This document shows positions 1-29,638 of a stretch of 57,067 bases of DNA, one piece after another. How positions within the stretch are numbered: position 1 is the first letter of the stretch; every line of letters begins with the position of its first letter. The stretch is from Vitrella brassicaformis CCMP3155. Its lineage: Eukaryota > Protista > Chromerida. The stretch is from the NCBI GenBank assembly GCA_001179505.1, contig CDMY01000530.1, positions 1 to 57,067 of the forward strand. The letters are read 5' to 3'. Position numbers and translations under genes: made by a program. The notes beneath the pieces were generated by a model. That model was not told the origin of the DNA. It worked only from the letters and a program-made list of their open reading frames with translations, and did not search any database.

Positions 1-457
1 AGGGCCACCCGGTAGCCTGGCTTGCCGATGAGGCGCTCGGCGCTCTTCTCGGTGAGCCACACGTGGCGGTGCTCTGGCTTGGCGGTCATGTCGGTGGGGT
101 CGGCCAGCGACTGCGAGTGACTGCGGTCGATCTCGATGGCATCCCAGTGCTCCTCAAGGCGATACAGAAGGGACTCGGGCGTGAAGGGCGGATCAGCTGC
201 ATCAGAAACACAGCATGCCCTCGCACTGCAGTGCATGCGACTGGATCTGTTTGGCTTACTACTCATGGCGACGCGCTGGCGACGGCCGGACAGCACACCA
301 AGGGATGTGTAGCACACGCTTCTGTGACATTCCTACCGCGGCAATGCCAGGGGATCCTCCGCCCCAAGCCATAATGGCACTGCGAGCCAGAACTGCGAAT
401 CTTGAGCGAGAGATGGCTCGAAGAGGCCTCCCCGTGTTCCACTGCCACCTTGGCATG
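1..457 (-). CDS. 5' part of an unknown gene running off the left edge
   Basis: Open exon 196..1 (DPPFTPESLLYRLEEHWDAIEIDRSHSQSLADPTDMTAKPEHRHVWLTEKSAERLIGKPGYRVA) follows a cag acceptor at 199-197. An upstream donor lies at 336. The start codon is unresolved. Confidence 0.5.
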
Positions 458-651
458 GTGCCTCCCTGGGAGTGTGCCACAGTCACCCAGATCTTGTCAT
501 CTTGCTGTGGGTCGTGGGCGAGTTGAAGAGAGATCTGCAGCAACACAGCAGCCACAGAGAGAGGTTTCAAGCTTCCGCGGTTCCGGGGGGTGCGGAGCAA
601 GCGAGAGCGAGCTTGTATTCGACCATTCGAGATTCATCATTTCGCGTCCCG

Positions 652-3141
652 ATGGCTGGCACTGACTCACAGGTGGGGCGCTGTGTTGCCTTACATGGCC
701 TTTTCTGCCTGATCTTTGTGTTTGCTTATGTGATTCAGAGTGCTTGGATGAGAGAGGCCGCGCCAGTCAACGAGCATCATGACGGCAACCAAACACAAGT
801 ACGTGAAGCACCTGTGCAGATCCATGATGAGTCAGTGCTGCAGTATGATCCCGTGTCTGTTGTTGGTCAGGCTGGCCTGTCACTCACTGCCGCCCCTGCA
901 GATGAGTCACATGAGCAGCAAGAGGGATCACCCGTCGGGCCTGCAAGTGAGTCGACAAGATGCCGATCGCGTTTCGCTTCGGACGATCTGTTGACTGATC
1001 CACCACCACTAGTGCGCACTGGCTTGCAAGTAGGCAGACTTCAGAGGCGTCGACGACATGCATGCGTCTGCCTTCCTGGTGCTGTCGTTCACTTCAGCCC
1101 TCTAGTGGTGATTTTTCATTGCCGGTGCCATCAGCAGCTCCTGGCCCGCCCGCTCCGGCCGTCGGGCAGCCAGGAACAGCGCAGGTGAGGCAACAAGCTC
1201 CAGTCTTTTGTCCTGTGTGAGTACATAGAAGGCCTTCTTTCCGCTCTGTGTATATGTGTCTGTCAGTATCCTTCCGCCTCCCCACTTCCTCGTGCCATGC
1301 CACACATCGGTCATGGGATAGTCATCACGCAGTGGTCGTCACGCAATCGCCTTCAGTCCCTCCCGCCATCACAGCCTACAACACCAACGACAGCGCCGTC
1401 CTCACATATGGTATGAACCGACAGACGTACGCACACTTCGTCGAATCATCGCACTCTTGTGTTTGTCCAGGTGACGACTGGGAGGGCGGGGGAGGTGTGC
1501 CTTGGAGAGCGGCTGCAGGTGGTGGAGGAATTCAATCGACGCAAGCAGAGCGGGGAGAAGATCTCGATGCCTCAGTTCGCACAAGAGAAGGGCGTGACCC
1601 TCGACCAACTGAAGAAATGGTGCTCTAAGGTGAAAAAGCAGAGGGAGTCGGGCGAGCATGTGATGGACCTCAGAATGAAGCGCACCAGACCCCCAAAGTA
1701 TCCGCAGATCGAGGATGAGATGAGGAAGTGGATGGCGGGCCTGGATGATCCTGCGAGTGTCCGCACGAAGGACATCCAGGCTAAGGCGCTGGAAATTGCC
1801 CTTCGGCTGGGGATCAGCGACTTTACGGCAAGCGATCCCTGGGTCAGGAGCTTCAAGGAGCGATATCAGCAGGTAGGGTGCGGGATGAGGTATATGATTG
1901 TCTCTCATTCTCTTTTGCTGTTTGTCGTCTTCGCCGAGTCTTCCTTTTCCGCATCAGCCCGCCCTTCCAACGCCCATGGCCTTCACTTGCCAGTCAACAG
2001 CAGCATACACACCCGCGAGCGGATTGCACGAGTCGAGTCTGCAGCCGCCTGCACAGGCGAGGCATACGCACACAAAGACATCGAATGCTTATCCCTCATC
2101 CGTTTTCTGTTGCCCGCTGCTTGCCTGCGTTTCCAGAGCCCGTATTTGTCACCCGATCCACCTGCTGCCGCCGCCGCCGCTGCTGCTGCTGCTGCTGCTG
2201 ATGCCGCCCTCTCTGCTGATGAGAGAAGTCCGCTCGACCCATCATGTCACGTACCGATCAGAGAGGACGGGATGCAGCCGTCAGATGTAGGAGAAGGGCA
2301 ACTACACGACTGCTGGTTTCGTCGTACACACATTGTCTGTGTGCTTTGTGTGCAGGCGCTGGATTGGCTCAAGACTTACTTGCGTGAAGCCATCCAGAAG
2401 TCAGTGCGCGAGGAGGACATCGCCCACAGACTGATGTGCACTCAGGTGTAAAAGACTCAAAGGATCATGTGTCATGGATAGATCTCTGTGCGGTCGATCA
2501 CCAGGTCGTTGGGGCGCTGCTCGACCAATTTGATGTATTGAGTGTCGATGAGTCTGAGAGCGATGAAGTACGCCTGCATGCTGTTGTCACCAATGCCTGT
2601 TGCTCACTCTTTCTACTTCACACAGGTCCGTCTCCTTGCTGGGCGCGTCAGCGAGCACCTGCAAGAGCTCTGTTGTCAAAGTGAGCACCAATGTCACGTC
2701 AGGGCCATCCACGAAATACGGTGTGTCTGGTGTCCTGTTATGTGTTTTAGTGGATTGGCCAATCAACGTCACGGCGCCTCAGCAGACTGTCCCCAGGCCG
2801 TCACCCGCCCCACCTCCTGCTGCTGCTGCTGCACCTGCTGTGGGAGTGGGTCAGGGGCCGCATGGTGTGACTGACAGGTCCACCGAGCCTCGTCTGGCCC
2901 AAGATATGTCCACACACAGAGAACAGGTCCTCCATTTTCCACATACATAACGGCCTCACACGCATATCGCGTGTTGTGTGTGTGTCTGATATCAGAGTTT
3001 ACCTCTGGCCGAGTCCGTCCCCCAGCCTCTACATCCCCCTCTACCTCCACCCCTTCATCCCCAAATGCAGCCTGCCCACGTGGGCAGGCCGACACCTCTC
3101 CCTCATCAGGAAACATCACGAGCACCAAGTCAAGCGTCTGA
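652..3141 (+). CDS. Multi-exon protein with CENP-B/pogo-type tandem HTH DNA-binding domain, no DDE domain
   Basis: Exon 1471-1872 encodes ERLQVVEEF...FAQEKGVTLDQLKKW then KYPQIEDEMRKWM...IQAKALEIALRLGISDFTASDPWVRSFKERY, the CENP-B N-terminal HTH plus HTH_Tnp_Tc5 pattern. Flanking exons are low-complexity and phase-compatible from ATG 652. The 3' end is uncertain and may splice into the next gene. Confidence 0.7.
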
Positions 3142-3712
3142 CGAGGAGAGTCACTCTGCATACTTGCGCGCAGCGGATGGCTTCATTGGCTCACTTGAAC
3201 CGAGCATTGACACGGTACAGACAGCACTCACACACCGAAGCAGGCAGAGACCCGGAGGTGAGCTGATTGGTTGCAGGCACCGAGACGTCCAGCAGAGCGT
3301 GAGGCAGCAGCCACTGTCGATCAGCAGTCTGAGCACACAATGAGCGTAAGCAAAAGAGCTGCTTTTGGCACCAAACGGGTGTGTCACGTTTTGTTTGTTC
3401 AGGTGGCAGCATCTGAGAGCGGGCTGACTGGGGTGAGACCGCCGGTGAAGATCCAGAGGAGCGACAAGCGCAGCCATCGGGAGGCTCCACCCTCCGTGGT
3501 CAGTGGAGTTGAAGAGATGAGCACGGATGCAAATGGGCAGCCTTTGTCTCCGCATGTGCAGGTGCTGTCCCGTTCGTGTGCCGAGAGTGTCATCAGCGTC
3601 ACAGCGGATGACTGCCTCAGTGACGGCAGACAGAAGGCAAGACCAAAGAGAGGCAGCAGCTCTGTTGCCAGTCTCATTGTTTGTCTGGCCTTATCACTCT
3701 CGCTATCTGCAG

Positions 3713-4360
3713 GTGATTGCGGGAAGCAGCCTGAGTGCGCCTGAGTGTGTGGCCCTTCACTCCCTATTCGTGGCCGACTCGGCCATATTCGACAAGTGCC
3801 AGTTCACATGCCTGTACAGGTACATACATGGCAAGGCAATAGAGAGGATATCAGGAGGACCACCAGAGGCTGTCTTTGTGACCCCCTTGTCTGACAGGGC
3901 CTCTGTTGACGGCAGCGGCTATGGCGATCTCCTTCGCTGTGTCGGTGATTTGAGCAGCCTCGTGTTTATCCTTCGCAAGAATGGCGATCTTTTCGGCGCT
4001 TATATGGGCAAAGAAATCAAGCTGCCCAACGACTCCGCCCTTGTCAATACTTACGAGTCTGGAGTGTGGCGTTTTTCCCTCGGAGACGCTGCGGTTTATG
4101 ACGACTGGCCGTTTGTGTGCGTGGCTGGCCGCGAGGGGGCTGTGGGCGGAGTGGCAATGATGCAGTTAGGATCTCGTCTTTGCTTGGGCTATGGAGATCG
4201 AGATACTGGCCCTGCTGATGACATGCGCAGCTACGGCCTTTTTGCCGAGCCGGTAGACTCCAGGCTGAGGATGGATGAGCCGTGCGAGTCGTCAGAGGTT
4301 TTCGTCGCTGACGAGCTGGAGGTGCTTCGCGCCGACGCACCAGCAACAAAGCTATCACAG
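3713..4360 (+). CDS. TLDc-like domain exon
   Basis: RASVDGSGYGDLLRCVGDLSSLVFILRKNGDLFGAY...VWRFSL...VAGREG...FVADELEVL matches the TLDc pattern (ASxDG, VFGAY, F..xEIEV). Clean AG/GT ends. Confidence 0.7.
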
Positions 4361-4418
4361 GTCAGAACGACAATGCAGGCCAGGACTGCTCTGACTGCTT
4401 CGTGTGTTTTCTCGACAG

Positions 4419-4824
4419 GACTTCATTGAGAACCTTCGGCGCCGCAATCTCTTCATCTACAACATCCCATCCGACTGGACGGACGATGACCTTGTCAAGG
4501 TTAGACACACAGACAGACAGACAGACAGCCAGACAGCTAGACAGCCAGACAGACAGACAGACAGGCGGGGAGCAGATGACAGCTCTCTTTGTGCGTTTCT
4601 GCAGTTTTTTTCGGAAGTATGGGAATATCGTGTCACCGAAGGTCGTCTGTGATGAGGACACAGGGCGTTCGAAGGGCTACGGCTTTGTATGTTTTGACTC
4701 GCCCGATGCGGCATCAAACGCTATCGACGGCATGGACGGCTCCGTTATCGACGGCAAACGACTCAAAGTCCAGCTAAAGAAGACACGCACGCGCCACTCA
4801 ACCGTGTGGACGCGGGAGAAACAA
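4419..4824 (+). CDS. RRM domain (two exons; frame problem at 4605-4611)
   Basis: RNP2 NLFIYNIP and RNP1 KGYGFVCF, followed by AIDGMDGSVIDGKRLKVQLK. Confidence 0.85.
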
Positions 4825-5788
4825 GGTCAGGTGAAAAATCACCTTCGACAAACCACGTACAGCTGTGTCGTGTTTGTGGGACGGTCCCGTAGATGTGGGA
4901 GACACTCATGACAAGGGTACTCAGCCCACGTCACTCAATGCAGCGCAGCCGCCTCTTCACGCCCATTCTCATCAGGAACCCCAGGAAGGTGAGCACTAAG
5001 TCTCTGCTCGTGTGTATATGTGTGTCTGTGTGTGTATGCAGGTCGCAGCGACAACCCGCCTCGGAGAGGAGGGGACGGCGAGCAGGGGACGTATCCGCCA
5101 GACGTAGGAGAGAGATGCGAACTACACGCCTGCTGATATGTCGCACCCGTTTGGTCTAATGCAGGCGCTGGACGAGCTGAAGTCGTATTTGCGTGAGCTC
5201 GTCCTCGAATTACGGGAGCACAGACTCACCCAGCCGCAGGCAAAGAAGCACCAGTTTTTCACGGCTGATGAATCGGTGAGGACGACTACTGTGTCAGCAC
5301 AAAGATATGGCTGTTGTCCTTGTGTGTCTCGTGTCTTCTCTAGCCCGTGGCTCCCGACCTCCGCCGCATTCGTCAATTCCCAGAATTGCACAAGGTCAAT
5401 TAAGGCATGTGCACAACGGAATTGATTGACCTTATTCGCTTACTGCAGCAAGACGAGTATCGTTGGTCCACTCCGGAAGTGCGGGCGTCTCGGTGGGTGC
5501 GTGACGTGACTCTGAAGCGACATACCCACGTGTGTGCATTTTCAGGCCCTGTTGCAAGACAAAGCTCCCCTTCGCTCACGGCAGGCAAGTCTTCGGACAG
5601 GAGCCAATCGAGGCCAACACATTATCCAATCGAGTCGCACAGAATGACCGTACCAGGGAATCGGAGCGGTCCGGCGTGTTTATTCGTGCTTCGCCGCCAT
5701 CACACCCAATCCCCCAGGCGACAGACAGCCGATTGCAGCTCCCAGCACCGTCACATGATACTCTGCCCAGGGCCTCTGTCAAAGATAA

Positions 5789-6109
5789 CATGTTCTACAA
5801 GACGCAACCCTGCAAGTAAGGGAGAGCGAAGCACACTCGTACAGCCTGCACTGGTCGCCTGTGCTTCAGGTACTGGTCTGAGAATCGTTGCCAGCACGGC
5901 GAGTCTTGTCGGTTCGCGCACGGCCTGCAGGAGCGGCGACCGCTCCCCGACCGTAAGCATTGAGACGCACCGACAAAGTCGCATTACCACACGCATTATC
6001 AGTGAGGTGGTGGCTGTTGTCAGTGAGCAAGACTAAGCTGTGCCGCGACTTTTCGGCGACGGGGAGATGCGACCAAGGGGCATCCTGCCTGTTTGCTCAT
6101 GGCCACCAG
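5789..6109 (+). CDS. Tandem CCCH zinc fingers
   Basis: Spliced FYKTQPCK|YWSENRCQHGESCRFAHG (intron after 5815) and SKTKLCRDFSATGRCDQGASCLFAHG. Confidence 0.85.
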
Positions 6110-6689
6110 GTACATGCAAGACAAGCCAGCGACCAAGCAGATAGTGCGTTGATACTATTTGATGTGCTCAGGAGCTCCGATCGACTCCCAACATCTTCAA
6201 GACTACCCCCTGCAATTTTCATGAGCAGGGCTACTGCAATCTTGGTTCTGCGTGTCGATACGCCCACGGAGTCGACGAGCTTCGACGGCGACCGGGCGAT
6301 GCCTCTAGACTGCCACGGCTGGCTCCGGCGACGTCATCCATGGCGATAGGCATCGGCGGCTCCGCACTTCCGGGCAGGGCGTCACAGCGACAGGTACATG
6401 AGGAAGGGAGAGGTTAGCTTTTTGGCACTTAGTCTGTCCATCTCTCTGTTTGAACACGCAGGCCTCTCCATCTCACTTCAACGGGCCGGGACATTCAACT
6501 AAGGCCTCCCAGCAAGCTGATGATTTGAATCAGCAGCCACACCGGGATGAAGAGGGCGGCAAGGAAGCCGAGACGGGCGGTGCACAGTCCGCTAAACCTT
6601 CCTCACAGCCTGAAGGTGGTCAGGATGAGGGCTATGAGGGAGTCGTCGATGGCCATAGCGGTACGGCTGAGTCAGCCGATGAGGTCTAC

Positions 6690-6903
6690 AACGAGCCACC
6701 CGTCTTGCTCAGGTCAGCCTGCCATATACAGACACAATACGTGACGCCGACCTATATGTACGTAATGCAGATACAAGGACGTCTACGAGTACTACGACAC
6801 TTACACCTCACTGATCGAGGCCGAGGCCGAGGATATAAGGAGCCGCAAAGAGTCGCAAAGACAGGTGGGTGAGTGGGTGGCAACATGCCAGCGCACGCTG
6901 GCG

Positions 6904-6937
<34 letters not shown>

Positions 6938-9684
6938 TTTTATGTGCAGACCAACATCACTGTCCGTTGGGAAGTTGCGTCGAATCGTCGTCGCACGGCC
7001 ATCTTTCTACTTCCCCAGGACGAAAGCAGCATGCGCCCTGTCGTGGGTGATGAACTTGCAATCAAATACACCTACAACGGTAGGCACCTTTCTGCTTAGT
7101 GATTCTGTGTGACATACTGGTGTGGGTGCTGTGTGTTGTGTCAGGTGGTGAGGAATGGAAGCAGGAGGGCCACGTCAAGATGATCACACCTCAGTGGATC
7201 ACGCCACATGAGGAAGTGGTCCTCGAGCTGCGTGGTCCCGTTGGCCAAAACGTACGTGCGTGCAGCACATGGATGGACGGATGGATGGCCACATTTTTGT
7301 CTTGATCAGGGTCCGTGGGAGCACGACATCATACAGCCCTACAGCGTGGAGTTCGTCTCGAAAGCTGTGAATATCGGCCGGTGGGCGGCCCATAGACCCA
7401 CACAGCAATGACCCACACCCACACGCAAAAGACACACACACAAGCCGCCTGCACATTCAGGATGAGGGGTGCCTTGAATTTGCTCGCCCGTGACGAGACC
7501 TCGGTCAGCAACTATCTTTTCTGTAAGCTGCTGGGCAATCTGATTGGCGATGACGAAGTCAAGGAACCTACTATTGAGTATGTCAAGATACGGCTCCAGC
7601 ACACACCTGATGTCATCTGGGTGATGCGAATATGTATCAGGCCGACGCTGCGGGGTGACTTGTCTGTCTCCGGTTTGGCCGAGCTGAACCGTTCGCAGGC
7701 CTTCGCCGTCAAGCAGGCGCTGCAGTTGCCACTGTGCCTCATCCAGGGGCCGCCAGGCACCGGCAAAACCCTCACATCGGCCACGATCGTCTACCACATG
7801 TGCAAACAGGGACAGGTACGTAGCAGCCCACGACACAGCTTTCGTTGCTGTACGCACCGTTTTTGTATTAGGGTCAGGTGTTGGTATGCGCACAATCCAA
7901 TGTCGCTGTGGACAACCTGGCGGAGCGGCTGGATCGAGCACGCCTCAAGGTGACACAGAGAGAAGCTGCACACACGAAGAGACGACGATGCAGCGAGCTA
8001 CCCATCTGCTTATTGCCACCCGCCCATGTGCACTTCCACAGGTGATCCGTTTGTACGCTCGCGGCCGCGAAGACGCGCAGTCGAGTGTGAAGGATCTGGC
8101 CCTCCACAGTCAGATCAGGCGCATTAGCAAGGCTGGTTGGGGTCCCGTGCAGGCAGAAATTGCCATGCTTGAGAGACGGAAGGTACACACACAGAGCCCA
8201 CACGAATTCAATTGCGTCGTTTCTCATTACGCCATCTACCTTCCAATGGAACAACAGGAGGAGAGAGGCGCGTTGCAGAATACGGATGAGTATAGGCTCA
8301 AGAAGCTGCGGGGCAAACTCGAGAAGGAGCTGCTCACTGCCGCCGACGTCATCTGCTGCACATGCATCGTGGCAGGCGACCAACGGCTCGAATGCTTCAG
8401 ATTCAAGCAGGTCAGTGTGTTGGCCTCACTGGCGATATGCGTGTGCATCGATCGGTCTGTCAATCAGGTGCTGATTGATGAGGCAACGCAGGCGATGGAG
8501 CCGGAGTGTCTCGTGCCGATCGTCATGGGCGCCAAGAAGCTGGTACTTGTCGGCGATCAGCGCCAGCTTGGACCTGTGGTGATATGCGAGGCAGTTAAGG
8601 CGGGCCTGTCGCAGTCGCTCTTTGAGCGACTCATCCACCTCGGAAACAAGCCTATCAGACTCGAAGTATGCTGGTCACACACACATGCGCACACAGCGTC
8701 TGATTGTCAATTGATGTGTGACATGTGCAGGTCCAGTACCGAATGCATCCGTGCTTGAGTGCATTTCCCTCTCAGTTCTTCTACGACGGCTCACTGCAGA
8801 ACGGCGTCACGATCAGAGAACGCACCTTTGAGAGCCTTCACTTCCCCTGGCCGAAGTACGCGACAATCAAGCAGAACGATAGACAGACAGACAGACAGAG
8901 GGAGCAATTAGGCTTTTTTTGCATCGATGTGCGGATGCAGCAAGGAGATGCCGATGTTCTTCTACAACTGTACGGGTCCCGAGGAGAAGAGCGGCACGAC
9001 GTTCCTCAACCGCACGGAAGGCGACCACATCAGGGAACTCGTCACTTGTTTCCTCAAATGCGGACTCAAGTAAGCACGCGCACACAAAGCATCGACAAAG
9101 ACGAAAGAGGGACAATCTGTGCTACACGTGCAGGCCGCATCAGATTGCCGTCATCACCCCCTACGAGGGCCAGAGGTCTCATATTGCGGCGGTGCTGGAT
9201 ATGGCCTTAACCTGGGAGGTCTTCAAGGGCATCGAAGTCGCATGTGTCGACGCATTCCAGGGACGAGAGAAGGACTTCGTCATTCTCTCATGTGTCAGAT
9301 CGAACGAAAACCAAGGTCACGCTGACACATTTAACACACTCGCCCATATATCATATGTGCGGCTGCTGGTGTGCAGGCATTGGGTTCTTGAACGATCCTC
9401 GTCGTTTGAATGTGGCTATCACACGCGCGAAGTACGGTCTGGTCATCTGCGGCAATGCCGACGTCTTGGCCGGGGGCAATGTAAGCAAATGATCGACCAA
9501 CGGACCGCACGTATGAAAACGCATGTCAATGCGTCGCTCGTTCTTAGGCACCATGTGGTCTAGCTTGCTGAATCATTTCAAGCAGTACGAGCTGGTGGTG
9601 GACGGCCCGCTGTTCAACCTGAGGCCTTCGTCCATGCCTGTCCCATCACGAAACTGGACCGACGACCGCGCCAATTCACTCAGA
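6690..9684 (+). CDS. UPF1: UPF1-like SF1B RNA helicase core (divergent paralog lacking the CH domain)
   Basis: Spliced exons give PVLLR|YKDVYEY...ESQRQ|[33 protein letters not shown] (motif I), [24 protein letters not shown] (II), [12 protein letters not shown] (III), SLFERL, QYRMHP (IV), [21 protein letters not shown] (V), [20 protein letters not shown] (VI). All are colinear with UPF1. Confidence 0.92.
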
Positions 9685-9986
9685 TGTGGGCGGCATTTGC
9701 GCAATGATTGGTTTTTCTCTCTGTCTCTCTCTCTTGTGTGCGAACACAGATGAGATGTCTGACTATGAGCGCATGCGGCCCGCCGGCCCATTCCAGCCAC
9801 TTGGGTACGCACACCAAACCATCCACGCGACACCTATGCATGTACGTGTGTATGTGTCAGGGGGCCGCCGAAAATGCTCGCTCCTCTCCCGTGCCCCGTG
9901 CCCCGTCAGGACGCATCTCTTCCCCCTGCCCCCAGCAGCAGCATCAGCAACAGGAAGGTGGTGATAGCCGTGGCGGCCGACACGAG

Positions 9987-10198
9987 ACGGCCACGAGCGG
10001 GGGCGGCAAGCGGTTCACACGTGCCGAGCTCTTCGCGTTGGCCAGGCTGCACGAGCAGACGGCCTCGAGCTCATCAACGGGGATCGTCGACAGCAGGAAA
10101 GCGGCAGACGTCAGTGCCGGCGGTGCACTCGGTGTGTGGGGGGCCGCCAAAAGTGAAGCCGAGACAGTCGATGGGAGCAGCACCGAGGCGCCCAACAA
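9987..10198 (+). repeat. Recent ~210 bp duplication (copy 1; copy 2 at 12127-12338)
   Basis: Near-identical sequence acggccacgagc...gaggcgcccaacaat at both positions, with only isolated substitutions. Confidence 0.9.
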
Positions 10199-10559
10199 TG
10201 GAACAGAGGGCCAGGCGAGCGCATCAGCTGCAGAAGCCAAGACGGACCATCCCTCACCGAGCAGACAGTCAGCCACCACACCAACTGCGGGCTCTTCACC
10301 AGCAGTAACGCTTTGCGAGTTGCTCATGCTGGAGTTCATTCAAAGCGCATGTGCCAGTTTCTTTTCGAGACTACCGGTGTCGACTCAGCGCCAGACGAGA
10401 ACAACAGTGGGCAAGACGGAGAGGAGGAGAGTCCAGATGAAGAGCTCGAGATTGAAGAGCTCGAGATGCAGCTGCTGCAGCTTTATCAGCAAAACAGGAG
10501 CACGTGGCCACAGTCGATGCGTCTGCCGGCGGGGGCGACGAGTATGGAGCGACAGGTGC

Positions 10560-11060
10560 AGCAGGGCAGATTTGTGTGCTGCGCCAGGTGTGGCGAGGCG
10601 GGTGCGCACGGGGTCGAGCTGGGCACCTGGGACGAACAAAACTGCCCAGGTAGCACCACAGCGAGAGGCCCCCTTGGTGCTGGTCTAATGGACTGTGGCT
10701 TCTCTTTTGTGTTCAGCCCGTTTGTGTTCTCGCTGCAAAGACTACATCCGGTCGGAGCACACTGACACGGTAACATAACATCAGAGCTGGGACTTGTGTC
10801 GGGTCGGGTCGTGTGGGATGAGGGACTCTGTCTGTGTGTCTGATTTCCCTGGATCAGGTGCAGCATCCAGCGAAACTCGCGCGCAACGAATGGCCAGATC
10901 AGGGCGTCCTGGTCACCTGCATCGACTGCGGCAACCTGGGCCACCTCAACTGCCGCCAGACACCGCAACAAGACAGCCTCACTGCGCCCCGGTGCTGCAA
11001 CTGTGGTGCTTAGGGCCACACGCAGGAGACCTGCATGGAAGCGAGACCTGAGCATTACGT
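10560..11060 (+). CDS. AIR1/2-ZCCHC7-like zinc-knuckle exons with an in-frame TAG
   Basis: CARCGEAGAHG, VTCIDCGNLGHLNC and RCCNCGA*GHTQETC. Exons 10741-10769 and 10858 onward are phase-compatible. The TAG is at 11011-11013. Confidence 0.65.
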
Positions 11061-11256
11061 CGCCGCTCGGTTGGACACAGGCAACCTCAAGGCGAGCGAC
11101 GCGTCTGCCGCTGCCTTCAGGAGACAATGCCACCCGTCACTTGTGCCACGGGTGGGTCAAGCCCTGAGATATCGAGCGCACACCCACACACAAAGGGATC
11201 GAGCAATTGCCCTCACCCATCCCCTCTTTTCCGCTGCCTGCCTGCTTGCCTCCGCA

Positions 11257-12903
11257 GAGCCCGTCCCTGTCATCAGATCCATCTGCCGCTGCCGCTGCTG
11301 CTGTTGCCGTTGCCGAAGCCGCCCTCTCTTCTTCTGACGAGGGAACTCTGCCCGGCCCAGAATGTCACGGACTGACTGAAGAGGGCGGGACGCACACGGC
11401 CGCTGCTGCCGCGCATCTGTCACGACCACCACCAATCATTGAGGATCGCATTCAAGAGATGTTCGGCTATCCGGATGGGAGCCAGGTCACCCACTTCCCT
11501 CTTGCAAATCGTGAGCACACAGGGGATGTCTGCTGGAGACCCTCTCACGTGTTGGGGCTCTGTTGGTGCGATGAATGAATAATGATGCAGGATTAGACAA
11601 GACCGAAATGTCCCCTTACCACCTAGAGGTGTGCGAGAATGAGCGAACAGACAGCACTTATTCATTTGGACGCGTATCATTAGGGTGGTTGCTCGAAGGG
11701 GCACACTGCACCTACGCCCACAGCGACCACGAGCTGGGCGAGATGCCGGGGCCTCCCGCTCCTTCAGTCCGTCCGGTGTTCGGGCACGTGAACGGGGGGA
11801 GAGACGTCCGTTCAGTCGGCACGGCTTTCCATGCTTCGGGTGAGCAGCCGATCAATGGGTGATGGTCAGACATACGTTTGTGCGTGCGTCCACCAGGCAC
11901 GTGTCGCCCCTGTCCACACGAGTGGACGACCGGCTGCGAGAATGGCAGAGACTGCATGTTTTGCCACCATGATAAGGAAACGTTGCCTCGCTGCATCCCG
12001 GAAAAATGTCGTGCGAGTTGGTGCGTTGGTCCAGAGTCCCACGCACCTTTTGAAGAAAGGCTCATCAGACCCACCATGTTCGAATTTTCGGCTGCATCGC
12101 CGTTCGGCAGTCAGCCGACCAGCGCCACGGCCACGAGCGAGGGCGGCAAGCGGTTCACACGTGCCGAGCTCTTCGCGTTGGCCAGGCTGCACGAGCAGAC
12201 GGCCTCGAGCTCATCAACGGGGATCGTCGACAGCAGGAAAGCGGCAGACGTCAGTGCCGGCGGTGAACTCGGTGTGTGGGGGGCCGCCAAAAGTGAAGCC
12301 GAGACAGTCGATGGGAGCAGCACCGAGGCGCCCAACAATAGAGCAGTGGGCCAGGCGAGCGCATCAGCTGCAGAAGGCATCACCGTCGGGGCTCCCACGA
12401 GGGACGAGCGCTTATCATCGGCCGACATCACGTCGACCAGCGAGACCAAGTCAGCCACCGAGAGCTTCCCTGGCCCGGTGCTGAGCCCCGCCTCAGACGC
12501 AAGCACTCCCTTCAGCCCGCCTGTCCCGTTTGATCCCGCCATCGGCGAGAGGACGATCCACCTGCCAATCGACGGCATATCCCCTCTGTCATCGGTCAAG
12601 GGAAGCGACTCTGTTGCAGTTCTTCTCAACCGTCTCAGGCAACACACGGCTTCCCGCAAGGCAGACGGAGGCCCGGTAAGTTCGGATGGCCCTGTTGCTA
12701 CCAAGGCGTCGCAGGATAAAGAAGGTGCAGATGGAGGTGATCCCAAGCGCTGCGATGCAATGAGTGTTGCCTTACCGCCTGCTGCCCTTCCAGCTGCTGT
12801 TGTCCTTTCTCCTTTGGACGGTAGAAGGGCGGTCGGCACATCTCAGGAAGTGAGCAGAGAGAGCGGATCGCAAGGTCCTGATGACGTCACGCAGCCGCCA
12901 GAG
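11257..12903 (+). pseudogene. Mosaic, partly decayed segment: poly-Ala exon, broken CCCH finger, Cys-rich finger, duplicated low-complexity module
   Basis: SPSLSSDPSAAAAAA exon paralogous to 2138-2250; KTEMSPYHLE|GGCSKG(fs)HCTYAHSDHEL; CRPCPHEWTTGCENGRDCMFCHH; GGKRFTRAELFALARL module nearly identical to 9987-10198. Confidence 0.55.
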
Positions 12904-12966
12904 GTAAGGGATAAAGGCTCATTGCACCACTGTTGATGTCTGGATATGAGTGTGCTTCACTGCAGG

Positions 12967-15900
12967 AACAAGTTGTTGACGACGGCCGTCGCATTGACTG
13001 TCCAGGCGACGCCGAGTCACTTGCTGCTGCTGCTGTTGTTGCTGCTGGTGGTGTTGCTGTTGCTGTCGACCAGCCGACGGAGGCCCGCGACACCATGAGC
13101 GTAAGCTACGCTGATGCGCACTAGTTGGCGACAAGTAGAGGTGTCATGCTCTGCTCATCCAGACGGCTTCTTCTGAGAGCTCTCGGCGACCTCCTGTACA
13201 CCAGGTGGATCATGATGCCACAATTGGTGGATCACTACAGGTTACAACAGCAATACAAGGAGTGCTGCTCTCATTTCTTCGCTTTCATTCTACGCGCTTC
13301 ATTCCAGGATTTCATCGAAAATCGCGAAGGGCGTAATCTCTTCATCGGCAACATCCCGTCCAGCTGGACGGACGATGACCTTGTCAAGGTCAGACAGACA
13401 GACAGACAGACAGCCAGACAGACAGACAGGCGGGACGATAGCCACCTTTTCAGGGTCAGGTAGCCAGGCAGTGACCGAATAATTACCTGCCTTCTTCGCT
13501 TGTCTGCAGCATTTTCTGCCATACGGAAGCATCGTCTCAGTGAAGGTTGCCTATGATGAGGCCACTGGCTGCACCAGGGGCTTCGGCTTCGTCTGCTTTG
13601 ACTCGCCCCAAGCAGCATGGGACGCCATCGACGGCATGGACGGCGCCTATGTCGACGGCAGAGGGCTTCGAGTCCAGCTGAAAGAGCATAGGGGTTGGAG
13701 GGCTGACCTGTACGACCGCAGGGACTGTAAGGACGCATCACGTAACGACGACCTTAGCGCGCAGTGTGGCCATGGCAGTAATTCCTTTGTCAGGCAATTT
13801 TGCGTACGACGGAAACAGGGAGAAAGGCGGTTTCTCATTTGGCAGTGTTTCTCACGCTTTGGGTGGGCGAGCCATACAGTGCCTGGAGGTATGATTCACA
13901 TCCTTGCATGTGTATGTTCATCAGGCAAGTGTACTCCCTGCTGGTACAAGTGGACGACGGGCTGCCATAATGGCATTAACTGCGACTTTTGCCATCATGG
14001 TAAGAACCAACTGTGCTACCGAACTTGTGTGTGGCTGGCTGTGTGTCGGTTCACTTGGTTCAGAGTCACACGCACCGTTCAGAGGGGTCCAAGCCGAACC
14101 CAACGAGCCCTTCATCAGTCAGCCGTCCCCTCCGCCCGTCGATTCGCGAGAGAGGGTCATGGCGCTGCTCAGCAAGACCGGCCGCACCGACGTCAGTCAC
14201 AACACGGGCCCGCTTGAAGGCGGCAAGAGGCTCAGCGTTGCTGAGCTCTTCGCCGCGGCCAAGCTGAACGAGCAGACGGCGTCACGTCCATCGGTGGAGA
14301 TCATCGAAGCCGGGCAGGCAGACAACGGTGCCAGTGCCGACACTGTCGACTCGGCCACTGCAGAGGCACCCAAGCAGCAGCAACAGCCACAGCAAGGCAC
14401 GAACGGGGCGGACAGCCAGACGGACGCGCCAACAGCATCAGCATCAGAACCACCAGCATCAGCACCAGCAGTAGAAGCCAAGATGGAACAAGCGCCAGTC
14501 GATCCCAGCGGACAGCACACCACGACCCCACAAGAGGAGGCCAAGCAGCAGCAGCCTAAGGACGCCCAACACCCAGACGCCCGAGAAGCCGTCGACCATT
14601 CGGCACCGTCAGCCATCGCTCTCCCAAGCGAGACCGTCACTTTTGAGGCTCCCACCAGCAACGAGCGCTCATCGTCGGCCAACCTCACATCCAGCACCGA
14701 GGCGGGCAAGTCACCCATCCCGCCTGCCCCGATCGATGTCAGCATCGCCCCCACAACCCCCACCGGCATCGCCACGCCCGAGGGAGATGGCGAGAGGAGC
14801 GTTTGCCGCCCCACAGGCAGCATCCAGCCCCCAGTAGCCGTCCAAAGCAGCGACTTCGGTGCAGCTCACTTCAGGCTCCTCTGCAACATTCCCATGTCGC
14901 CACACGCGCACACCTCATCCGGCGAGGAGAAGGGAGGTCCAGCAGGTTATTCCGAGGCCACAAGTGGAGTGCTGACTACTGGAACAAATGCATCGCATGA
15001 GGAGTATGCTGCAGACGGAGATGGGGGTGAGGCCGGCAAGGGGAAGGGCAGGCCTCGCTCGTCGCGTCTGTCATGTGCGTCTGTATGTATGTCATCAGAT
15101 GAGGGCTCTCAGGCCGCCACACCCACGCATCAACATCCCGGCCTGGACACCATCAGACACCGCGACGAGCTCGGGAATGCAAGGTAGGCGACGAGCCATT
15201 ATTCGGTTTACGTGCGGTCCCTCGCCGTTTATCAGTAGGCGGCAACGGCTGGTGGGCGACCTCGAGTTGCCCAAGATCGACGCGGCCCAAATGGGCATGC
15301 CTAGCGCGCCCTCATATGGACTGCACCAGCAACCTCACATCCAGACCAACGTCGCTGCCCAAACCGGGTGTCTGCACGTCGAGAACAGTCACAACACCGA
15401 CACCACTGAGGCGCCCAAGGATAAAGCGCCGGATCAGGACAACGTACGCGCTGCAGAAGGTACCACCGTCGCGACTCCCACGAAGAGCGTACGCTTATCA
15501 TCGGCCGACATTACGTCGACGAGCAAGGCCAAGTTAGCCACCGAGAGCTCCCCTGTCCCGGCGCTGAGCTCCACCCCAGAAACAAGCACTCCCTTCAGCC
15601 CGCCTGCCCCGACTGGTCTGAGCCTCGCCACCACGCCGCGCAACGGCCTCGCCACGCCCGAGGGAGAGGGCGAGAGCAATGTTTGCCGCCCCACAAGCGG
15701 CATACGGCTTCTATCAACCGTCGAACGCGGCGACTCGGGTGCAACTCTTGTTAGCCTCCTCTCACACACGTCTTCCCGCGAGGAAGAGGGAGGCCCGGCA
15801 TCCTGCACAGAGGGCACCAATGGGTCAGCGGGCACTGCGGCATCCTGCACAGAGGGCACCAATGGGTCAGCGGGCACTGCAGACGGAGAGGAGGGGGAGG

Positions 15901-17049
15901 GCAGGCCTCTGGCGTGTCGGTACACGATCGAGGAGCTCATGAGGATCGGTCAGCTCCCGCAATGCAGAATCAGGCCGCCAAACCTTCACCCATACCTCGA
16001 CAAGTAAGCCGGGCCAAAACCAACACCTCAGTCATTGTTGCGCTGCGTTTGGGTGTGTGTGTGCGTGGTTGTGTAGGGGCTGCAAGCCCCTGCCCAATCG
16101 GCCCTGCAAGTAAGAGAGAGAGGGGGATATTCACTTACCGTTTTCACTCCCTGTCCCACTGGTTGCTTCAGGTATTGGTCACGAAGTCGCCGTTGCCCCG
16201 CTGGCCACGCTTGCCCGTTTAGACACAGCGAGGAAGAGCTGTGGCTCCCCGATTTCCCCCCGATAAGCAAGGCACAGGTGAGCGCTCAAGGATCTGCGAC
16301 TTCGTCCCCTGAGTGCCTCTGTGTTGCACTGCAGGGACAGGTTGCTGACGAGTCGGATGAGGTGCTGATGCCGGGTGGATCCATCGGCCGTGGCCCCCAC
16401 AATGTGGTGAACGAAACCGGCTGACAACACGATAGCAAACGAGACCTCTGTGTGTTTGCCTGGTTGAGTGCAGACCTCCACCGGCCCAGCGGAAACCGAG
16501 TCATCTGCTTCTGACGATCAGCAATCGAGCGGCGAGACTGCCAGCGTAAGCCACGAGAGTTGCTCTTGTCGACAAGCAGACATATCGTTCTTTGTCAATT
16601 CAGATGGCCCCTCCGGACAGCCGCAGCGTCTTTATGCGTGCTTCGCCGCCATCACACCAGATCTCCCAGACGACAGACAGTCAACTGCAGCCCTCTATCA
16701 AAGATAACATGTTCTATAGGACGCAGCCCTGCAAGTAAGGGAAAGCAAGGCTAGCTGGTCTAGGGCCTGCACTGGTCGCCTGTGCTTCAGGTACTGGTCT
16801 GAGAATCGTTACCGCTCTCCTGTCCCCCACCACGGACCCGAGGAGCTTCAACGGCGAGCCAGTGATGCTGATGGCCAAGACGGCTCCGCCCCCCCAGCTG
16901 CACAGGCTGTCGAGGTCACATCCGCAGAGGGCGGCTTGGATTCATCGGCGAAGGCCGATGATTGGTTCGACTGTGATGCCGAGCAGGATGCGCCCGTCCT
17001 CGACCTGACGCACATGAGGAAGACCGACACAAAGATAGGGGGCGGGTGA
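12967..17049 (+). CDS. RRM + Cys-rich finger + low-complexity repeats + eIF4E-binding-like motif + CCCH protein
   Basis: RRM NLFIGNIP / RGFGFVCF at 13309-13690; CTPCWYKWTTGCHNGINCDFCHH at ~13930; RYTIEELMRI at 15918; spliced RPCK|YWSRSRRCPAGHACPFRH (exons 16077-16109, 16172-16277); last exon 16791-17049 ends in TGA. The 5' limit is uncertain. Confidence 0.65.
15797..15880 (+). repeat. In-frame 42-bp tandem duplication (ASCTEGTNGSAGTA x2)
   Basis: ggcatcctgcacagagggcaccaatgggtcagcgggcactgc occurs twice in direct succession. Confidence 0.9.
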
Positions 17050-17439
17050 GGGCCGCGTATGAGACTCAGAGTGTGTGTGCGGCTTGTGTGTGGCTTCCAT
17101 TTTTGTGCTATGTGCTTTGTGCTTTGTGCTTCGTGGTTTGTGTGTGCGTGTGTGCGTGTGTGCGTGTGTGCGTGTGTACGTGTCTACCTGTGATCGACGC
17201 GGCTTTTTTCCCGCATGACAGCCCATAGCCTACGCACCAGCATTTGATGTACGACAGCTGTCGTACGACAATCGTGCGATAGGTCGGTAGAGGGCGCTGT
17301 TGGGGTAGGTAGACGACTTTTTTGGATCGTGAGATGGATGCCGGATGCCTGTAGGGGCAGGGAGGGCAGAGAAGTGAGTGAGAGTTGCGTGCGGATGTGC
17401 ATGCCCGTCGCATTGTGTGTGGTGGTGGGGGGGGGGGGG

Positions 17440-17739
17440 NNNNNNNNNNNNNNNNNNNNNNNNNNNNNNNNNNNNNNNNNNNNNNNNNNNNNNNNNNNNN
17501 NNNNNNNNNNNNNNNNNNNNNNNNNNNNNNNNNNNNNNNNNNNNNNNNNNNNNNNNNNNNNNNNNNNNNNNNNNNNNNNNNNNNNNNNNNNNNNNNNNNN
17601 NNNNNNNNNNNNNNNNNNNNNNNNNNNNNNNNNNNNNNNNNNNNNNNNNNNNNNNNNNNNNNNNNNNNNNNNNNNNNNNNNNNNNNNNNNNNNNNNNNNN
17701 NNNNNNNNNNNNNNNNNNNNNNNNNNNNNNNNNNNNNNN
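17440..17739. other. Assembly gap (300 N) flanked by poly-G
   Basis: Run of N with G homopolymers on both sides. Confidence 0.99.
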
Positions 17740-28500: not shown

Positions 28501-28687
28501 AACTGATCATGTGCCCACCTCCCTCAGTGCTCTACCATACAGAAAAACTACCGCATCCCCTCTATCTATGACAGAAATACTGAGCGAGCCAGAGGCGAAG
28601 TTGGTGAGTGCAAGCAACATTGGCTCGCCACGACTGCCACCTCCCTCACCACTCACTCTATTTATACCCTCAGACATGTCTGTCTGT

Positions 28688-29574: not shown

Positions 29575-29638
29575 CAGGGAATGGTTTGTTGAACCCTGTA
29601 GCCCAGCACAAACCCTTGACCCGACGAGGGCGTGAAGG

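What the first reader, a model, noticed from the sequence alone, without database searches (positions are those of the whole stretch)
652..17049. 16.5 kb exon-shuffled mosaic built from RNA-surveillance and translation-control parts
Seen: the same modules recur in different combinations. ALD.LK.YLRE exon at 2356 and 5164; SP.LS.DP-polyAla exon at 2138 and 11257; ..VD...HT/DT-MS|gtaagc exon ends at 3345 and 13101; RRM exons at 4419 and 13309 with the same (GACA)n intron; KDNMFY(K/R)TQPCK|YWSENR exons at 5780/5870 and 16700/16791; KR(F/L).xAELF module at 9987, 12127 and ~14215; a Ser/Thr module at ~12380, 14630 and 15470. One duplicate is nearly identical, so shuffling is recent. Inference: a locus generating chimeric RNA-binding regulators (RRM, CCCH, helicase, knuckle, 4E-binding), some intact and some decaying.
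Basis: partly seen in the sequence, partly recalled or inferred. Interest (0 to 1): 0.75.

Follow-up and report, generated by a model that had tools for sequence, protein, structure and literature searches.

The report
Reshuffled RNA-binding gene pair in Vitrella
Two neighbouring genes of the alga Vitrella brassicaformis are assembled from copied pieces of other genes, including the RNA-quality-control helicase UPF1, which makes a clear but mechanistically ordinary case of new genes arising by duplication and exon reuse.

Summary
The window is a whole scaffold of Vitrella brassicaformis CCMP3155.

I read 1.4-17.05 kb as two same-strand, intron-rich genes with decayed fragments between them.
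- **Gene alpha (about 1.4-10.3 kb, hand-curated):** pogo/CENP-B-type HTH, polyAla, TLDc, RRM, three CCCH fingers, then a UPF1-type helicase core that lacks the CH domain, and a tail with an F-x4-L-F motif.
- **Gene beta (annotated CEM20487.1, 12.08-17.05 kb):** a partial paralogue of alpha. Five anchors lie in the same order at 72-74% DNA identity, and intron positions are shared. Beta lost TLDc and gained three copies of a zinc-finger, KRFxxAELF and Ser/Thr unit.

Donor loci exist elsewhere in the genome.
- The canonical UPF1, with the genome's only CH domain, is on contig C732.
- An intact zinc-knuckle gene is on contig C553.

Paralogous loci on C451, C878 and C336 carry the same modules in other orders. 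Some pieces are broken: a knuckle with an in-frame stop, a CCCH finger with Cys replaced by Tyr, and a possible frameshift in RRM1.

The 98% duplicate is a 253-bp patch with sharp borders, most likely gene conversion. So this is a mosaic made by DNA-level segmental duplication, not a special shuffling machine. No transcript evidence was available. The scan had already noted the TLDc expansion elsewhere in this genome.

The parts
1..334 (-). Start of a divergently oriented neighbour gene. It continues on scaffold C451 from position 16424.
   Evidence: w1-43 is 100% identical to C451:16423-16381 at the edge of an N gap. The open frame runs across the junction exactly as in the paralogous copy at C451:1610-3000.
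735..1466 (+). Non-coding 'head' of the duplicated unit (promoter or 5' UTR of gene alpha). A candidate start codon at 1408-1410 is followed directly by a GT donor.
   Evidence: 88-92% identical to C451:1-827. Mismatches show no codon periodicity and the indels are 2 nt long. Sequence read.
1471..1872 (+). Gene alpha: CENP-B/pogo-type double HTH exon (HTH_Tnp_Tc5).
   Evidence: Pfam PF03221, E 1.8e-9. The same exon has 42 matches in the genome with the same borders and almost all frames open. dN/dS is 0.15 against C878.
2137..2445 (+). Gene alpha: polyAla exon (2137-2286) and ALD..LK.YLRE exon (2356-2445).
   Evidence: Splice sites and phase 0 read. Paralogous blocks at 11227-11394 and 5080-5196.
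2505..3561 (+). Gene alpha: small exons. They include a diverged 'GRGP' exon (about 2751-2890), the MS exon (3277-3345) and the SES exon (3403-3561).
   Evidence: Hand-curated GT-AG introns of 55-62 nt. Homologous to C451:13476-12736 and C878:120477-120761.
3713..4360 (+). Gene alpha: TLDc-family exon.
   Evidence: The window's own Pfam TLD score is 13.6 bits, below the 24.5-bit cut-off. However, 14 of 16 aligned genomic paralogues match TLD, best E 8.6e-8. At least 150 copies in the genome. A 58-nt phase-0 intron leads to the RRM exon.
4419..4824 (+). Gene alpha: RRM1 in two exons (4419-4499, and 4605 or 4618 to about 4824) with a (GACA)n intron. A T7 run at 4605-4611 is one base longer than in three paralogues.
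   Evidence: Pfam RRM_1, E 1.3e-14. Four-way alignment. Sequence: with the conserved acceptor the intron is 105 nt, where a length of 1 mod 3 is needed.
5164..5275 (+). Gene alpha: second ALD..LK.YLRE exon (ALD').
5780..6392 (+). Gene alpha: three intact CCCH zinc fingers. The first is split by a phase-2 intron after 'PCK'.
   Evidence: Pfam zf-CCCH, E 1e-7 and 2e-8. Sequence and splice phases read.
6462..9840 (+). Gene alpha: linker exon (6462-6712) and UPF1-type SF1 helicase core with the 1B barrel, RecA1, RecA2 and C-terminal region. There is no CH domain.
   Evidence: AAA_11 and AAA_12. Best solved relatives are UPF1/NAM7 at E 7.6e-37, against 5e-9 for the next helicase family. 52-78% amino-acid identity across most exon-level matches to C732, with the same intron position and phase at the first core exon. 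The CH domain is found only on C732.
9861..10304 (+). Tail exon with KRFTRAELF (copy A). The 253-bp tract 9987-10239 is 97.6% identical to copy B.
   Evidence: Whether it belongs to alpha is inferred only.
10370..11050 (+). Decayed copy of a zinc-knuckle gene. It has an internal deletion of about 240 nt and an in-frame TAG at 11011-11013 inside a CCHC knuckle.
   Evidence: 74-78% identical to three segments of C553:39075-40049, where the frame is open, the codon is GAG and a bona fide zf-CCHC is present.
11227..11860 (+). Copy of the polyAla exon (11257-11510) and a degenerate CCCH-like exon (about 11591-11839). It may be the untranslated or decayed 5' part of gene beta.
   Evidence: Not included in the public model CEM20487.1.
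11863..12675 (+). Unit B: alveolate-type finger (C-x2-C...GC-x-NG-x2-C-x-FCHH, 11872-11960), KRFTRAELF, and a Ser/Thr-rich part. The public gene beta starts at Met 12076.
   Evidence: The GT donor after the finger that is present in unit C is GA in B. Relatives of the finger are P0002-P0009.
12966..13726 (+). Gene beta: MS' exon, SES' exon and RRM2 (13308-13388, and 13510 or 13546 to 13726).
13794..15026 (+). Gene beta, unit C: three exons, all of phase 1-1. They carry a short exon, the finger, then KRLSVAELF plus a Ser/Thr-rich part.
15099..16003 (+). Gene beta: unit D (Ser/Thr-rich) ending in RYTIEELMRI. A perfect 42-bp tandem duplication lies at 15796-15879.
   Evidence: The motif is conserved in C451 as RYTIEELLRI.
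16077..17046 (+). Gene beta: one intact CCCH finger (16077-16277), the GRGP exon (16335-16406), a further exon, then a dead CCCH finger and the gene end. In the dead finger, TAC replaces TGC at 16810-16812 and 9 nt are deleted.
   Evidence: An independent JGI gene model (P0001) covers 15.2-17.05 kb.

Best explanation
The stretch holds two adjacent genes on the same strand of Vitrella brassicaformis. They are partial paralogues, built by repeated DNA-level (intron-containing) segmental duplication inside a lineage-specific, fast-turning-over gene family.

**Gene alpha.** It joins the front of a common Vitrella 'HTH-TLDc' gene type to an RRM, three CCCH fingers and a copy of the UPF1 helicase. 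That helicase copy begins just after the CH (UPF2-binding) domain.

**Gene beta.** It arose when the polyAla-to-CCCH part of an alpha-like gene was copied downstream. The copy lost TLDc. It then gained three copies of a finger, KR[FL]xxAELF and Ser/Thr unit, one of them as a block of 1-1 phase exons inside the phase-1 intron after the RRM.

**Other events.** A fragment of a zinc-knuckle gene landed between the two genes and decayed. Gene conversion later homogenised 253 bp between motif copies A and B.

**Function (inferred, not shown).** The products are RNA-binding proteins. Alpha would bring an ATP-dependent UPF1-type helicase to RNAs chosen by its RRM and CCCH parts, without UPF2 control. 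Beta would be an RRM and CCCH adaptor whose Y/F-x4-L-hydrophobic motifs may contact eIF4E.
For: **Shown**
- Five colinear anchors at 72-74% identity, including intron sequence.
- Short (55-75 nt), phase-compatible GT-AG introns link HTH to polyAla, TLDc to RRM, CCCH3 to the linker, and the linker to the helicase.
- The helicase is nearest to UPF1. The genome's only CH domain sits on C732, next to a helicase with 52-78% amino-acid identity across most exon-level matches and the same intron position and phase.
- C553 holds the intact knuckle gene.
- The public model CEM20487.1 joins units B, C and D, RRM2 and the CCCH exons into one 1235-aa protein.
- Unit C exons are all phase 1-1, and the RRM exon ends in phase 1.
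- Folded modules have dN/dS of 0.14-0.38.
- C451, C878 and C336 carry the same modules in other orders.
- The HTH exon has at least 40 copies and TLDc at least 150. At least 17 HTH copies have TLDc 1-4 kb downstream on the same strand.
- The A/B tract has sharp borders.
Against: - There is no transcript evidence.
- My crude exon-chaining script can thread an open path through almost anything in this GC-rich DNA, so it proves little.
- RRM1 may be frameshifted.
- Window-versus-C451 comparisons give dN/dS of 0.26-0.94, so recent copies may be under weak constraint.
- The scaffold breaks exactly at repeated units, so the large-scale order of units is uncertain.
Confidence: 0.7

Rival explanations
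1. Alpha is not one gene. The region holds three or more ordinary neighbouring genes (an HTH-TLDc gene, an RRM-CCCH gene and a CH-less UPF1 paralogue) that merely lie close together. The duplication history stays the same, but there is no giant chimeric protein.
For: Vitrella genes are densely packed. Alpha's chain is hand-curated. C451 has X followed directly by the helicase, with CCCH after it. This shows the RRM-CCCH block can be absent from that position. RRM1 has a possible frameshift.
Against: - The TLDc exon ends at a GT donor 58 nt before the RRM acceptor, in phase.
- CCCH3 to linker and linker to helicase introns are 68 and 59 nt, in phase.
- The helicase part starts mid-protein with no upstream start of its own, and its linker exon keeps the UPF1-like 3' end.
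Confidence: 0.2
2. Transposon-mediated capture of gene fragments. A pogo/Tc5-like or other element picked up exons of host genes (UPF1, knuckle gene, RRM gene) and spread them, as Pack-MULEs or Helitrons do in plants.
For: The HTH_Tnp_Tc5 domain has at least 40 copies. Fragments of UPF1 and of the C553 gene occur away from their source.
Against: - No inverted repeats of 30 nt or more in 1-18 kb.
- Only one DDE_1 transposase locus in the genome, on another contig.
- HTH exons are spliced, have conserved borders, and are under purifying selection.
- Copied pieces keep their introns.
Confidence: 0.07
3. Assembly artefact. Collapsed or mis-joined repeat copies create an apparent mosaic.
For: The window starts with 43 nt identical to the edge of an N gap in C451. 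N gaps bracket the region at 17440-17739 here and at C451:16081-16380. One base in a T7 homopolymer looks like a possible read error.
Against: - 1-17439 has no N.
- The copies differ by 19-33%, far too much for an assembler to confuse them.
- The 98% tract is only 253 bp, and both copies have their own flanks on both sides.
- An independent JGI gene model reproduces 15.2-17.05 kb apart from one 14-residue repeat.
Confidence: 0.05
4. The similarity only reflects common domain families (any RRM resembles any RRM), with no specific duplication history.
For: RRM and CCCH are very common domains.
Against: The similarity extends into introns and splice sites, and is colinear. The partners are each other's best matches in the genome apart from C451.
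Confidence: 0.02

Closest known systems
UPF1 (RENT1/NAM7), the nonsense-mediated-decay helicase
   Same: The SF1 helicase core with the 1B barrel, all conserved motifs read by eye, and the C-terminal region. It shows 52-78% amino-acid identity across most exon-level matches to Vitrella's own UPF1 on C732, with a shared intron position and phase.
   Different: There is no CH zinc-binding domain, the UPF2 docking and autoinhibition module. Its place is taken by HTH, TLDc, RRM and three CCCH fingers. Regulation through UPF2 is therefore not expected (inference from established UPF1 biology).
HELZ and MOV10-type UPF1-like helicases (from my own knowledge, not tested here)
   Same: A UPF1-like helicase core combined with RNA-binding or CCCH modules and short linear motifs for translation or decay factors.
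   Different: Alpha is a recent, independent derivative of the organism's own UPF1 (dS about 0.6-0.9), not an orthologue of HELZ or MOV10. It also carries an HTH and a TLDc domain.
Exon shuffling and chimeric gene birth by segmental duplication (classical concept: symmetric exons inserted into same-phase introns)
   Same: Copied blocks keep their introns. The unit C exons are 1-1 in a phase-1 intron. Donor genes persist elsewhere. Some copies decay.
   Different: Most of the pattern in the window is one colinear partial gene duplication plus tandem repeats. The UPF1 breakpoint lies inside an exon (only the last 10 or so codons of the linker exon are alike), not neatly in an intron.
Vitrella's expanded TLDc families (BTB-BTB-TLDc, secreted TLDc), noted earlier in this scan
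   Same: The same TLDc module family with at least 150 copies, and the same habit of swapping halves between copies (notes s1-201659 and s1-248714).
   Different: Here TLDc is preceded by a pogo-type HTH exon and followed by RNA-binding parts and a helicase. The notes I saw do not list this combination.
eIF4E-binding proteins (4E-BP, eIF4G, 4E-T) with the Y-x4-L-hydrophobic motif (from my own knowledge)
   Same: RYTIEELMRI fits the motif and is conserved in the C451 paralogue.
   Different: The three KR[FL]xxAELF copies have Phe or Leu in place of the defining Tyr. No binding has been shown, and the rest of the protein is unrelated.

Membership tests
UPF1 (RENT1/NAM7) | SF1B helicase core (AAA_11 and AAA_12, Walker [14 protein letters not shown], motif VI) | tested here: met
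   Best PDB matches are UPF1/NAM7 at E 7.6e-37.
UPF1 (RENT1/NAM7) | 1B barrel region directly after the CH domain (RY.D.YEY...NITVRW...) | tested here: met
   w6772-7252 aligns exon by exon with C732:17796-17271, with the same intron position and phase.
UPF1 (RENT1/NAM7) | N-terminal CH domain (Pfam UPF1_Zn_bind) | tested here: not met
   A PF09416 search of the whole genome hits only C732:18097-18871. Upstream of the core the window has CCCH fingers and an acidic linker.
pogo/Tc5 transposon | HTH_Tnp_Tc5 DNA-binding domain | tested here: met
   PF03221, 37.9 bits against a cut-off of 22.2.
pogo/Tc5 transposon | DDE_1 transposase domain next to the HTH | tested here: not met
   Only one DDE_1 locus in the genome (C458), and none near any HTH copy.
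pogo/Tc5 transposon | Terminal inverted repeats | tested here: not met
   No inverted repeat of 30 nt or more in 1-18 kb.
TLDc domain | Match to Pfam TLD above the curated cut-off | tested here: inconclusive
   The window copy scores 13.6 bits against a cut-off of 24.5. However, 14 of 16 aligned paralogues match, best E 8.6e-8. A profile search of PDB sequences found nothing.
RRM | Pfam RRM_1 with RNP1 (GFGFVCF) and RNP2 | tested here: met
   E 1.3e-14 and 4.6e-11. RRM1 has a possible +1 frameshift at the start of its second exon.
CCCH zinc finger | C-x7-9-C-x5-C-x3-H with all four ligands | tested here: met
   Met at about 5810-5921 (first finger, split by the intron after 'PCK'), 6035-6109, 6172-6290 and 16077-16277. 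Not met at 16791-16850, where the second Cys is Tyr and 9 nt are deleted.
CCHC zinc knuckle | C-x2-C-x4-H-x4-C in an open frame | tested here: not met
   The window copy has TAG at 11011-11013 inside the knuckle. The donor gene on C553 passes Pfam zf-CCHC at 24.1 bits against a cut-off of 20.8.
eIF4E-binding motif | Y-x4-L-hydrophobic | tested here: inconclusive
   YTIEELM at about 15921-15941 fits. Copies A, B and C have F, F and L in place of Y. There are four coding-frame hits to a related pattern against 0.43 expected.
eIF4E-binding motif | Binding to eIF4E | not testable with these tools
   Needs a pull-down or a co-fold with Vitrella eIF4E.
Exon shuffling (phase rule) | Inserted module made of symmetric exons in an intron of the same phase | tested here: met
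   Exons 13794-13862, 13925-13999 and 14064-15026 are all 1-1, and the RRM exon before them ends in phase 1. The phases rest on the public gene model.
Exon shuffling (phase rule) | Donor genes identifiable elsewhere | tested here: met
   UPF1 on C732 and the knuckle gene on C553.

The most novel reading that the evidence does not exclude
Alpha is a working, UPF2-independent offshoot of UPF1 whose targeting is hard-wired by an RRM, three CCCH fingers and an HTH. It sits in a diversifying family that includes the hypervariable TLDc repertoire of this alga. On this reading the locus is part of a rapidly evolving RNA-directed defence or surveillance system against viruses or mobile elements, and ongoing module exchange between the copies (window, C451, C878, C336) is what generates new specificities.
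Probability: 0.15. Interest if true: 0.7.

Novelty: new variant of a known kind. Interest (0 to 1): 0.45.

Why it matters
If the gene models hold, this is a clean case, caught in progress, of new multidomain RNA-binding genes being assembled from parts of existing ones. The donors (UPF1 and a zinc-knuckle gene), the intermediates (C451, C878) and the decaying leftovers are all still visible in one genome. It also gives a natural experiment on UPF1: a copy stripped of its regulatory CH domain and given its own RNA-binding modules. It adds an RNA-binding and helicase branch to the unusual TLDc and HTH expansions of Vitrella. It does not reveal a new mechanism.

Tried and rejected
- **Word-based protein searches.** I searched with unit B and with CEM20487.1, whole and residues 1-110. 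These gave nothing useful, so I could not recover the public model of alpha.
- **Large protein search with unit B.** It found only the window's own gene and alveolate proteins sharing the finger motif.
- **My exon-chaining script.** It skipped real CCCH exons and threaded an open path to 12.1 kb, so I judged it too permissive and did not use it for gene borders.
- **'All 15 introns of beta are phase 0'.** This idea of mine was wrong. After placing GT-AG exactly, the phases are 0,0,0,0,1,1,1,1,2,2,2,0,0,0,2.
- **Profile search of PDB sequences for the TLDc module.** No hits.
- **Rfam.** Nothing in 1-17.4 kb.
- **Literature.** Nothing on this locus, or on UPF1 paralogues or exon shuffling in Vitrella.
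- **Transposon capture.** Rejected for lack of inverted repeats and transposase.
- **Tandem continuation after beta.** Rejected, because w17-30 kb has no match to C451.

Full report
**Source and context.** The window is scaffold C530 of a 72.7-Mb, 1064-contig genome. A protein encoded in it, CEM20487.1, is annotated as Vitrella brassicaformis CCMP3155 and lies on a 57,067-nt contig. GC content is 56-63%. Positions 1-17439 contain no N, and a 300-N gap follows at 17440-17739.

**Are the repeats real?** Yes.
- polyAla exon: 2103-2276 / 11227-11394, 73.6%.
- RRM exons with their intron: 4443-4780 / 13332-13685, 72%.
- Split CCCH exon pair: 5674-5892 / 16626-16813, 74%.
- KRFxxAELF module: 9987-10239 / 12127-12379 at 97.6%, and both against 14203-14332 at 72-74%.
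- Ser/Thr module: 12318-12528 / 15401-15611 at 81%, and 14716-14882 / 15596-15762 at 77%.
- ALD exon: 2263-2387 / 5080-5196 at 67%, including the upstream intron.
- 'MS|gtaagc' pair: only 17 nt, weak.

I also found a repeated finger (C-x2-C...GC-x-NG-x2-C-x-FCHH) at 11872 and 13900. A repeated 'GRGP' exon lies at 16335-16406, with a diverged counterpart near 2751-2890.

**Domains.** Pfam gives the following.
- HTH_Tnp_Tc5 within the open frame 1417-2448 (exon 1471-1872).
- RRM_1 at 4312-4908 and 13483-14214.
- zf-CCCH at 5957-6346 and 6163-6414.
- A weaker CCCH at 16077-16421.
- AAA_11 and AAA_12 at 7396-9560.

The 3713-4360 exon is a diverged TLDc. Its own score is below the cut-off, but 14 of 16 aligned genomic paralogues match Pfam TLD, best E 8.6e-8.

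**Gene beta.** The public model CEM20487.1 (1235 aa) maps to 16 exons from 12076 to 17046, with introns of 52-290 nt. It joins unit B, the MS' and SES' exons, RRM2, unit C, unit D with RYTIEELMRI, an intact CCCH finger, the GRGP exon and a dead CCCH finger.

The model skips the first 12 codons of the second RRM exon. The acceptor conserved in four paralogues, at 13509, would restore them. An independent JGI model (P0001) reproduces the last third of the gene.

**Gene alpha (hand-curated; exons searched one at a time, no joined protein built or searched).** Reading the three frames gives a chain with GT-AG introns of mostly 55-75 nt and matching phases.
- ATG 1408-1410.
- HTH 1471-1872.
- polyAla 2137-2286.
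- ALD 2356-2445.
- Small exons, then MS 3277-3345 and SES 3403-3561.
- TLDc 3713-4360.
- RRM1 4419-4499 plus its second exon.
- ALD' 5164-5275.
- Three CCCH fingers, 5780-6392.
- Linker 6462-6712.
- Helicase from 6772.

The key joins are in phase: TLDc to RRM (58 nt), CCCH3 to linker (68 nt) and linker to helicase (59 nt). One blemish remains. The second RRM1 exon begins with a T7 run, one base longer than in three paralogues. With the conserved acceptor the frame breaks. An AAG acceptor 13 nt downstream would rescue it at the cost of four residues, or the extra T is a read error.

**The helicase is a copy of UPF1 without its CH domain.** Solved-structure relatives are UPF1/NAM7 at E 7.6e-37, against 5e-9 for the next family. 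A Pfam UPF1_Zn_bind search of the whole genome hits only C732:18097-18871, immediately upstream of a helicase with 52-78% amino-acid identity across most exon-level matches to the window's.

The first core exon (RYKDVYEY...) starts after a phase-2 intron at the same place in both genes. Only the last ten or so codons of the preceding exon are alike: NEPPVLLR in the window against NEPQPVSLK on C732. The C451 copy keeps the same junction. So C732 is the canonical UPF1 and the donor.

**Colinearity.** Between 2.1-6.3 kb and 11.2-16.9 kb the anchors run in the same order: 2103, 3335, 4443, 5674, 6264 map to 11227, 13090, 13332, 16626, 16830. Their identities are similar, which fits one duplication of the polyAla-to-CCCH part. 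Relative to alpha, beta lacks TLDc and has extra blocks.
- Unit B lies between the polyAla' and MS' exons.
- Unit C lies after RRM2.
- Unit D lies before the CCCH exons.

Unit C's three exons are all phase 1-1, and the RRM exon before them ends in phase 1. This is the classical condition for inserting a module into an intron.

Two modules are out of order: ALD', and the GRGP exon, which is upstream of MS in alpha, C451 and C878 but downstream of CCCH in beta.

**Other loci.** A DNA search of the genome with 600-17100 gave 69 matches.
- **C451:1-16080 (minus strand, 67-92% identity)** has, in order: HTH, ALD block, GRGP exon, X exons, helicase, CCCH fingers, a Ser/Thr block, the finger block, unit D, the YTIEELL and CCCH block, RRM, and then the head of another unit. 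It has no TLDc. Its CCCH fingers follow the helicase instead of preceding it.
- **C878:118.6-122.7 kb** has HTH, GRGP exon, X exons, TLDc, only the C-terminal half of the helicase, then an RRM.
- **C336** has Ser/Thr and KRL-type pieces.

The modules therefore do recur in different orders once other loci are included.

**A third donor.** w10454-11048 matches three segments of a gene at C553:39075-40049 at 74-78%. In C553 the frame is open and includes a bona fide CCHC knuckle. In the window about 240 nt are missing and a knuckle codon, GAG in C553, is TAG at 11011-11013. This piece is a decaying fragment.

**Other decay.**
- The last CCCH finger has TAC for TGC at 16810-16812 and a 9-nt deletion.
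- The CCCH-like exon at about 11640-11740 lacks a cysteine.
- Unit B has lost the GT donor after its finger.

**Selection and timing.**

| Comparison | dN/dS | dS |
|---|---|---|
| HTH vs C878 | 0.15 | about 1.5 |
| TLDc vs C878 | 0.28 | about 1.4 |
| RRM1 vs RRM2 | 0.14-0.36 | about 1.0 |
| Helicase vs UPF1 (C732) | 0.17-0.26 | 0.6-0.9 |
| Finger, unit B vs unit C | 0.38 | about 1.1 |
| Ser/Thr blocks | 0.5-0.8 | 0.4-0.7 |
| Window vs C451 | 0.26-0.94 | 0.1-0.9 |

The folded parts have been kept by selection. The C451 copy is mostly recent (dS 0.1-0.33 for seven of the eight exon comparisons).

**The near-identical pair.** Copies A and B are identical at 247 of 253 positions, and both flanks are unalignable. 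Copy C aligns to both through the tract and to A a little beyond it. The tract occurs nowhere else in the genome. Gene conversion between old paralogues fits better than a fresh duplication.

**Family background.**
- The HTH exon has 42 genomic matches with the same borders, nearly all open.
- At least 17 of them have TLDc-like exons 1-4 kb downstream on the same strand.
- TLDc-like exons number at least 150.
- Only one DDE_1 transposase locus exists, and no inverted repeats bound the blocks. The HTH is therefore a domesticated DNA-binding exon, not a live transposon.

Earlier notes of this scan had already reported the TLDc expansion and the swapping of halves in other Vitrella loci, and a domesticated Tc5-type gene.

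**Motifs.** A pattern covering KRFTRAELF (A and B), KRLSVAELF (C) and RYTIEELM has four coding-frame hits in the window, against 0.43 expected in shuffles. C451 keeps RYTIEELL. Only the last copy has the Tyr that defines eIF4E-binding motifs. Binding is untested.

**Assembly.** w1-43 equals C451:16423-16381 at the edge of C451's gap. The minus-strand open frame at w1-334 continues into C451:16424 onward exactly as in the paralogue at C451:1610-3000. The two scaffolds therefore abut at a repeat-induced break, and the number and order of whole units need long reads. The internal structure of 1-17.4 kb is not in doubt, because its repeats are 19-33% diverged.

**Verdict.** The stretch is a mosaic of RNA-surveillance and RNA-binding parts with intact and decaying members. 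It was made by ordinary segmental duplication, tandem duplication, fragment insertion and gene conversion in a fast-evolving family. Most of the in-window repeats reflect one colinear partial gene duplication. Function and transcript structure are inferred only.

Noticed in passing
window 28000-42100: Three tandem copies of a unit of about 4.7 kb. 33879-37036 matches 38533-41751 at 80%. 30323-32211 matches 35419-37036 and 40161-42075 at about 77%. A further paralogue lies at C451:25987-29327 (77-79%), in the opposite relative orientation to the 1-17 kb homology.
   Followed up: no
window 1-334 (minus strand) and C451:16381-17600: A neighbour gene is cut by the scaffold end. There is a 43-nt exact overlap with C451, and the open frame continues across it. 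A paralogue lies at C451:1610-3000. Scaffolds C530 and C451 abut here.
   Followed up: partly
window 15796-15879: A perfect 42-bp tandem duplication (14 residues, twice) in gene beta. An independent JGI gene model (P0001) has only one copy, so this is either a polymorphism or an assembly difference.
   Followed up: partly
window 4605-4611: A T7 homopolymer at the start of the second RRM1 exon is one base longer than in three paralogues. This is either a real frameshift or a homopolymer read error.
   Followed up: partly
genome-wide (e.g. C268, C646, C718, C908, C260, C238, C282): A family of at least 40 spliced CENP-B/Tc5-type HTH exons. At least 17 are followed by one to three TLDc exons on the same strand. 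Only one DDE_1 transposase exists in the genome.
   Followed up: partly
L006 (C878:118600-122700): An alpha-like gene that keeps only the C-terminal (RecA2) half of the UPF1-type helicase, placed directly after TLDc and followed by an RRM. It is probably a truncated or decaying relative.
   Followed up: partly
C592:101994-102256: Another isolated copy (72%) of the UPF1 1B-barrel exons (w6914-7176).
   Followed up: no
window 13389-13545: The public model CEM20487.1 uses an acceptor at 13545 and drops 12 codons of RRM2. The acceptor conserved in four paralogues is at 13509.
   Followed up: partly
proteins P0002-P0009: Proteins with two or three repeats of the finger C-x-PC-x3-W-x3-GC-x2-G-x2-C-x-(F/H/R)CH-x-C, each repeat followed in some by a basic stretch. 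This is the same finger as at 11872 and 13900. It has no Pfam family above cut-off.
   Followed up: no
window 4503-4564, 8862-8907, 13391-13429, 27404, 32445, 44932: (GACA)n microsatellites recur in introns across the window. Their presence in both RRM introns is inherited, but the motif itself is common here.
   Followed up: no
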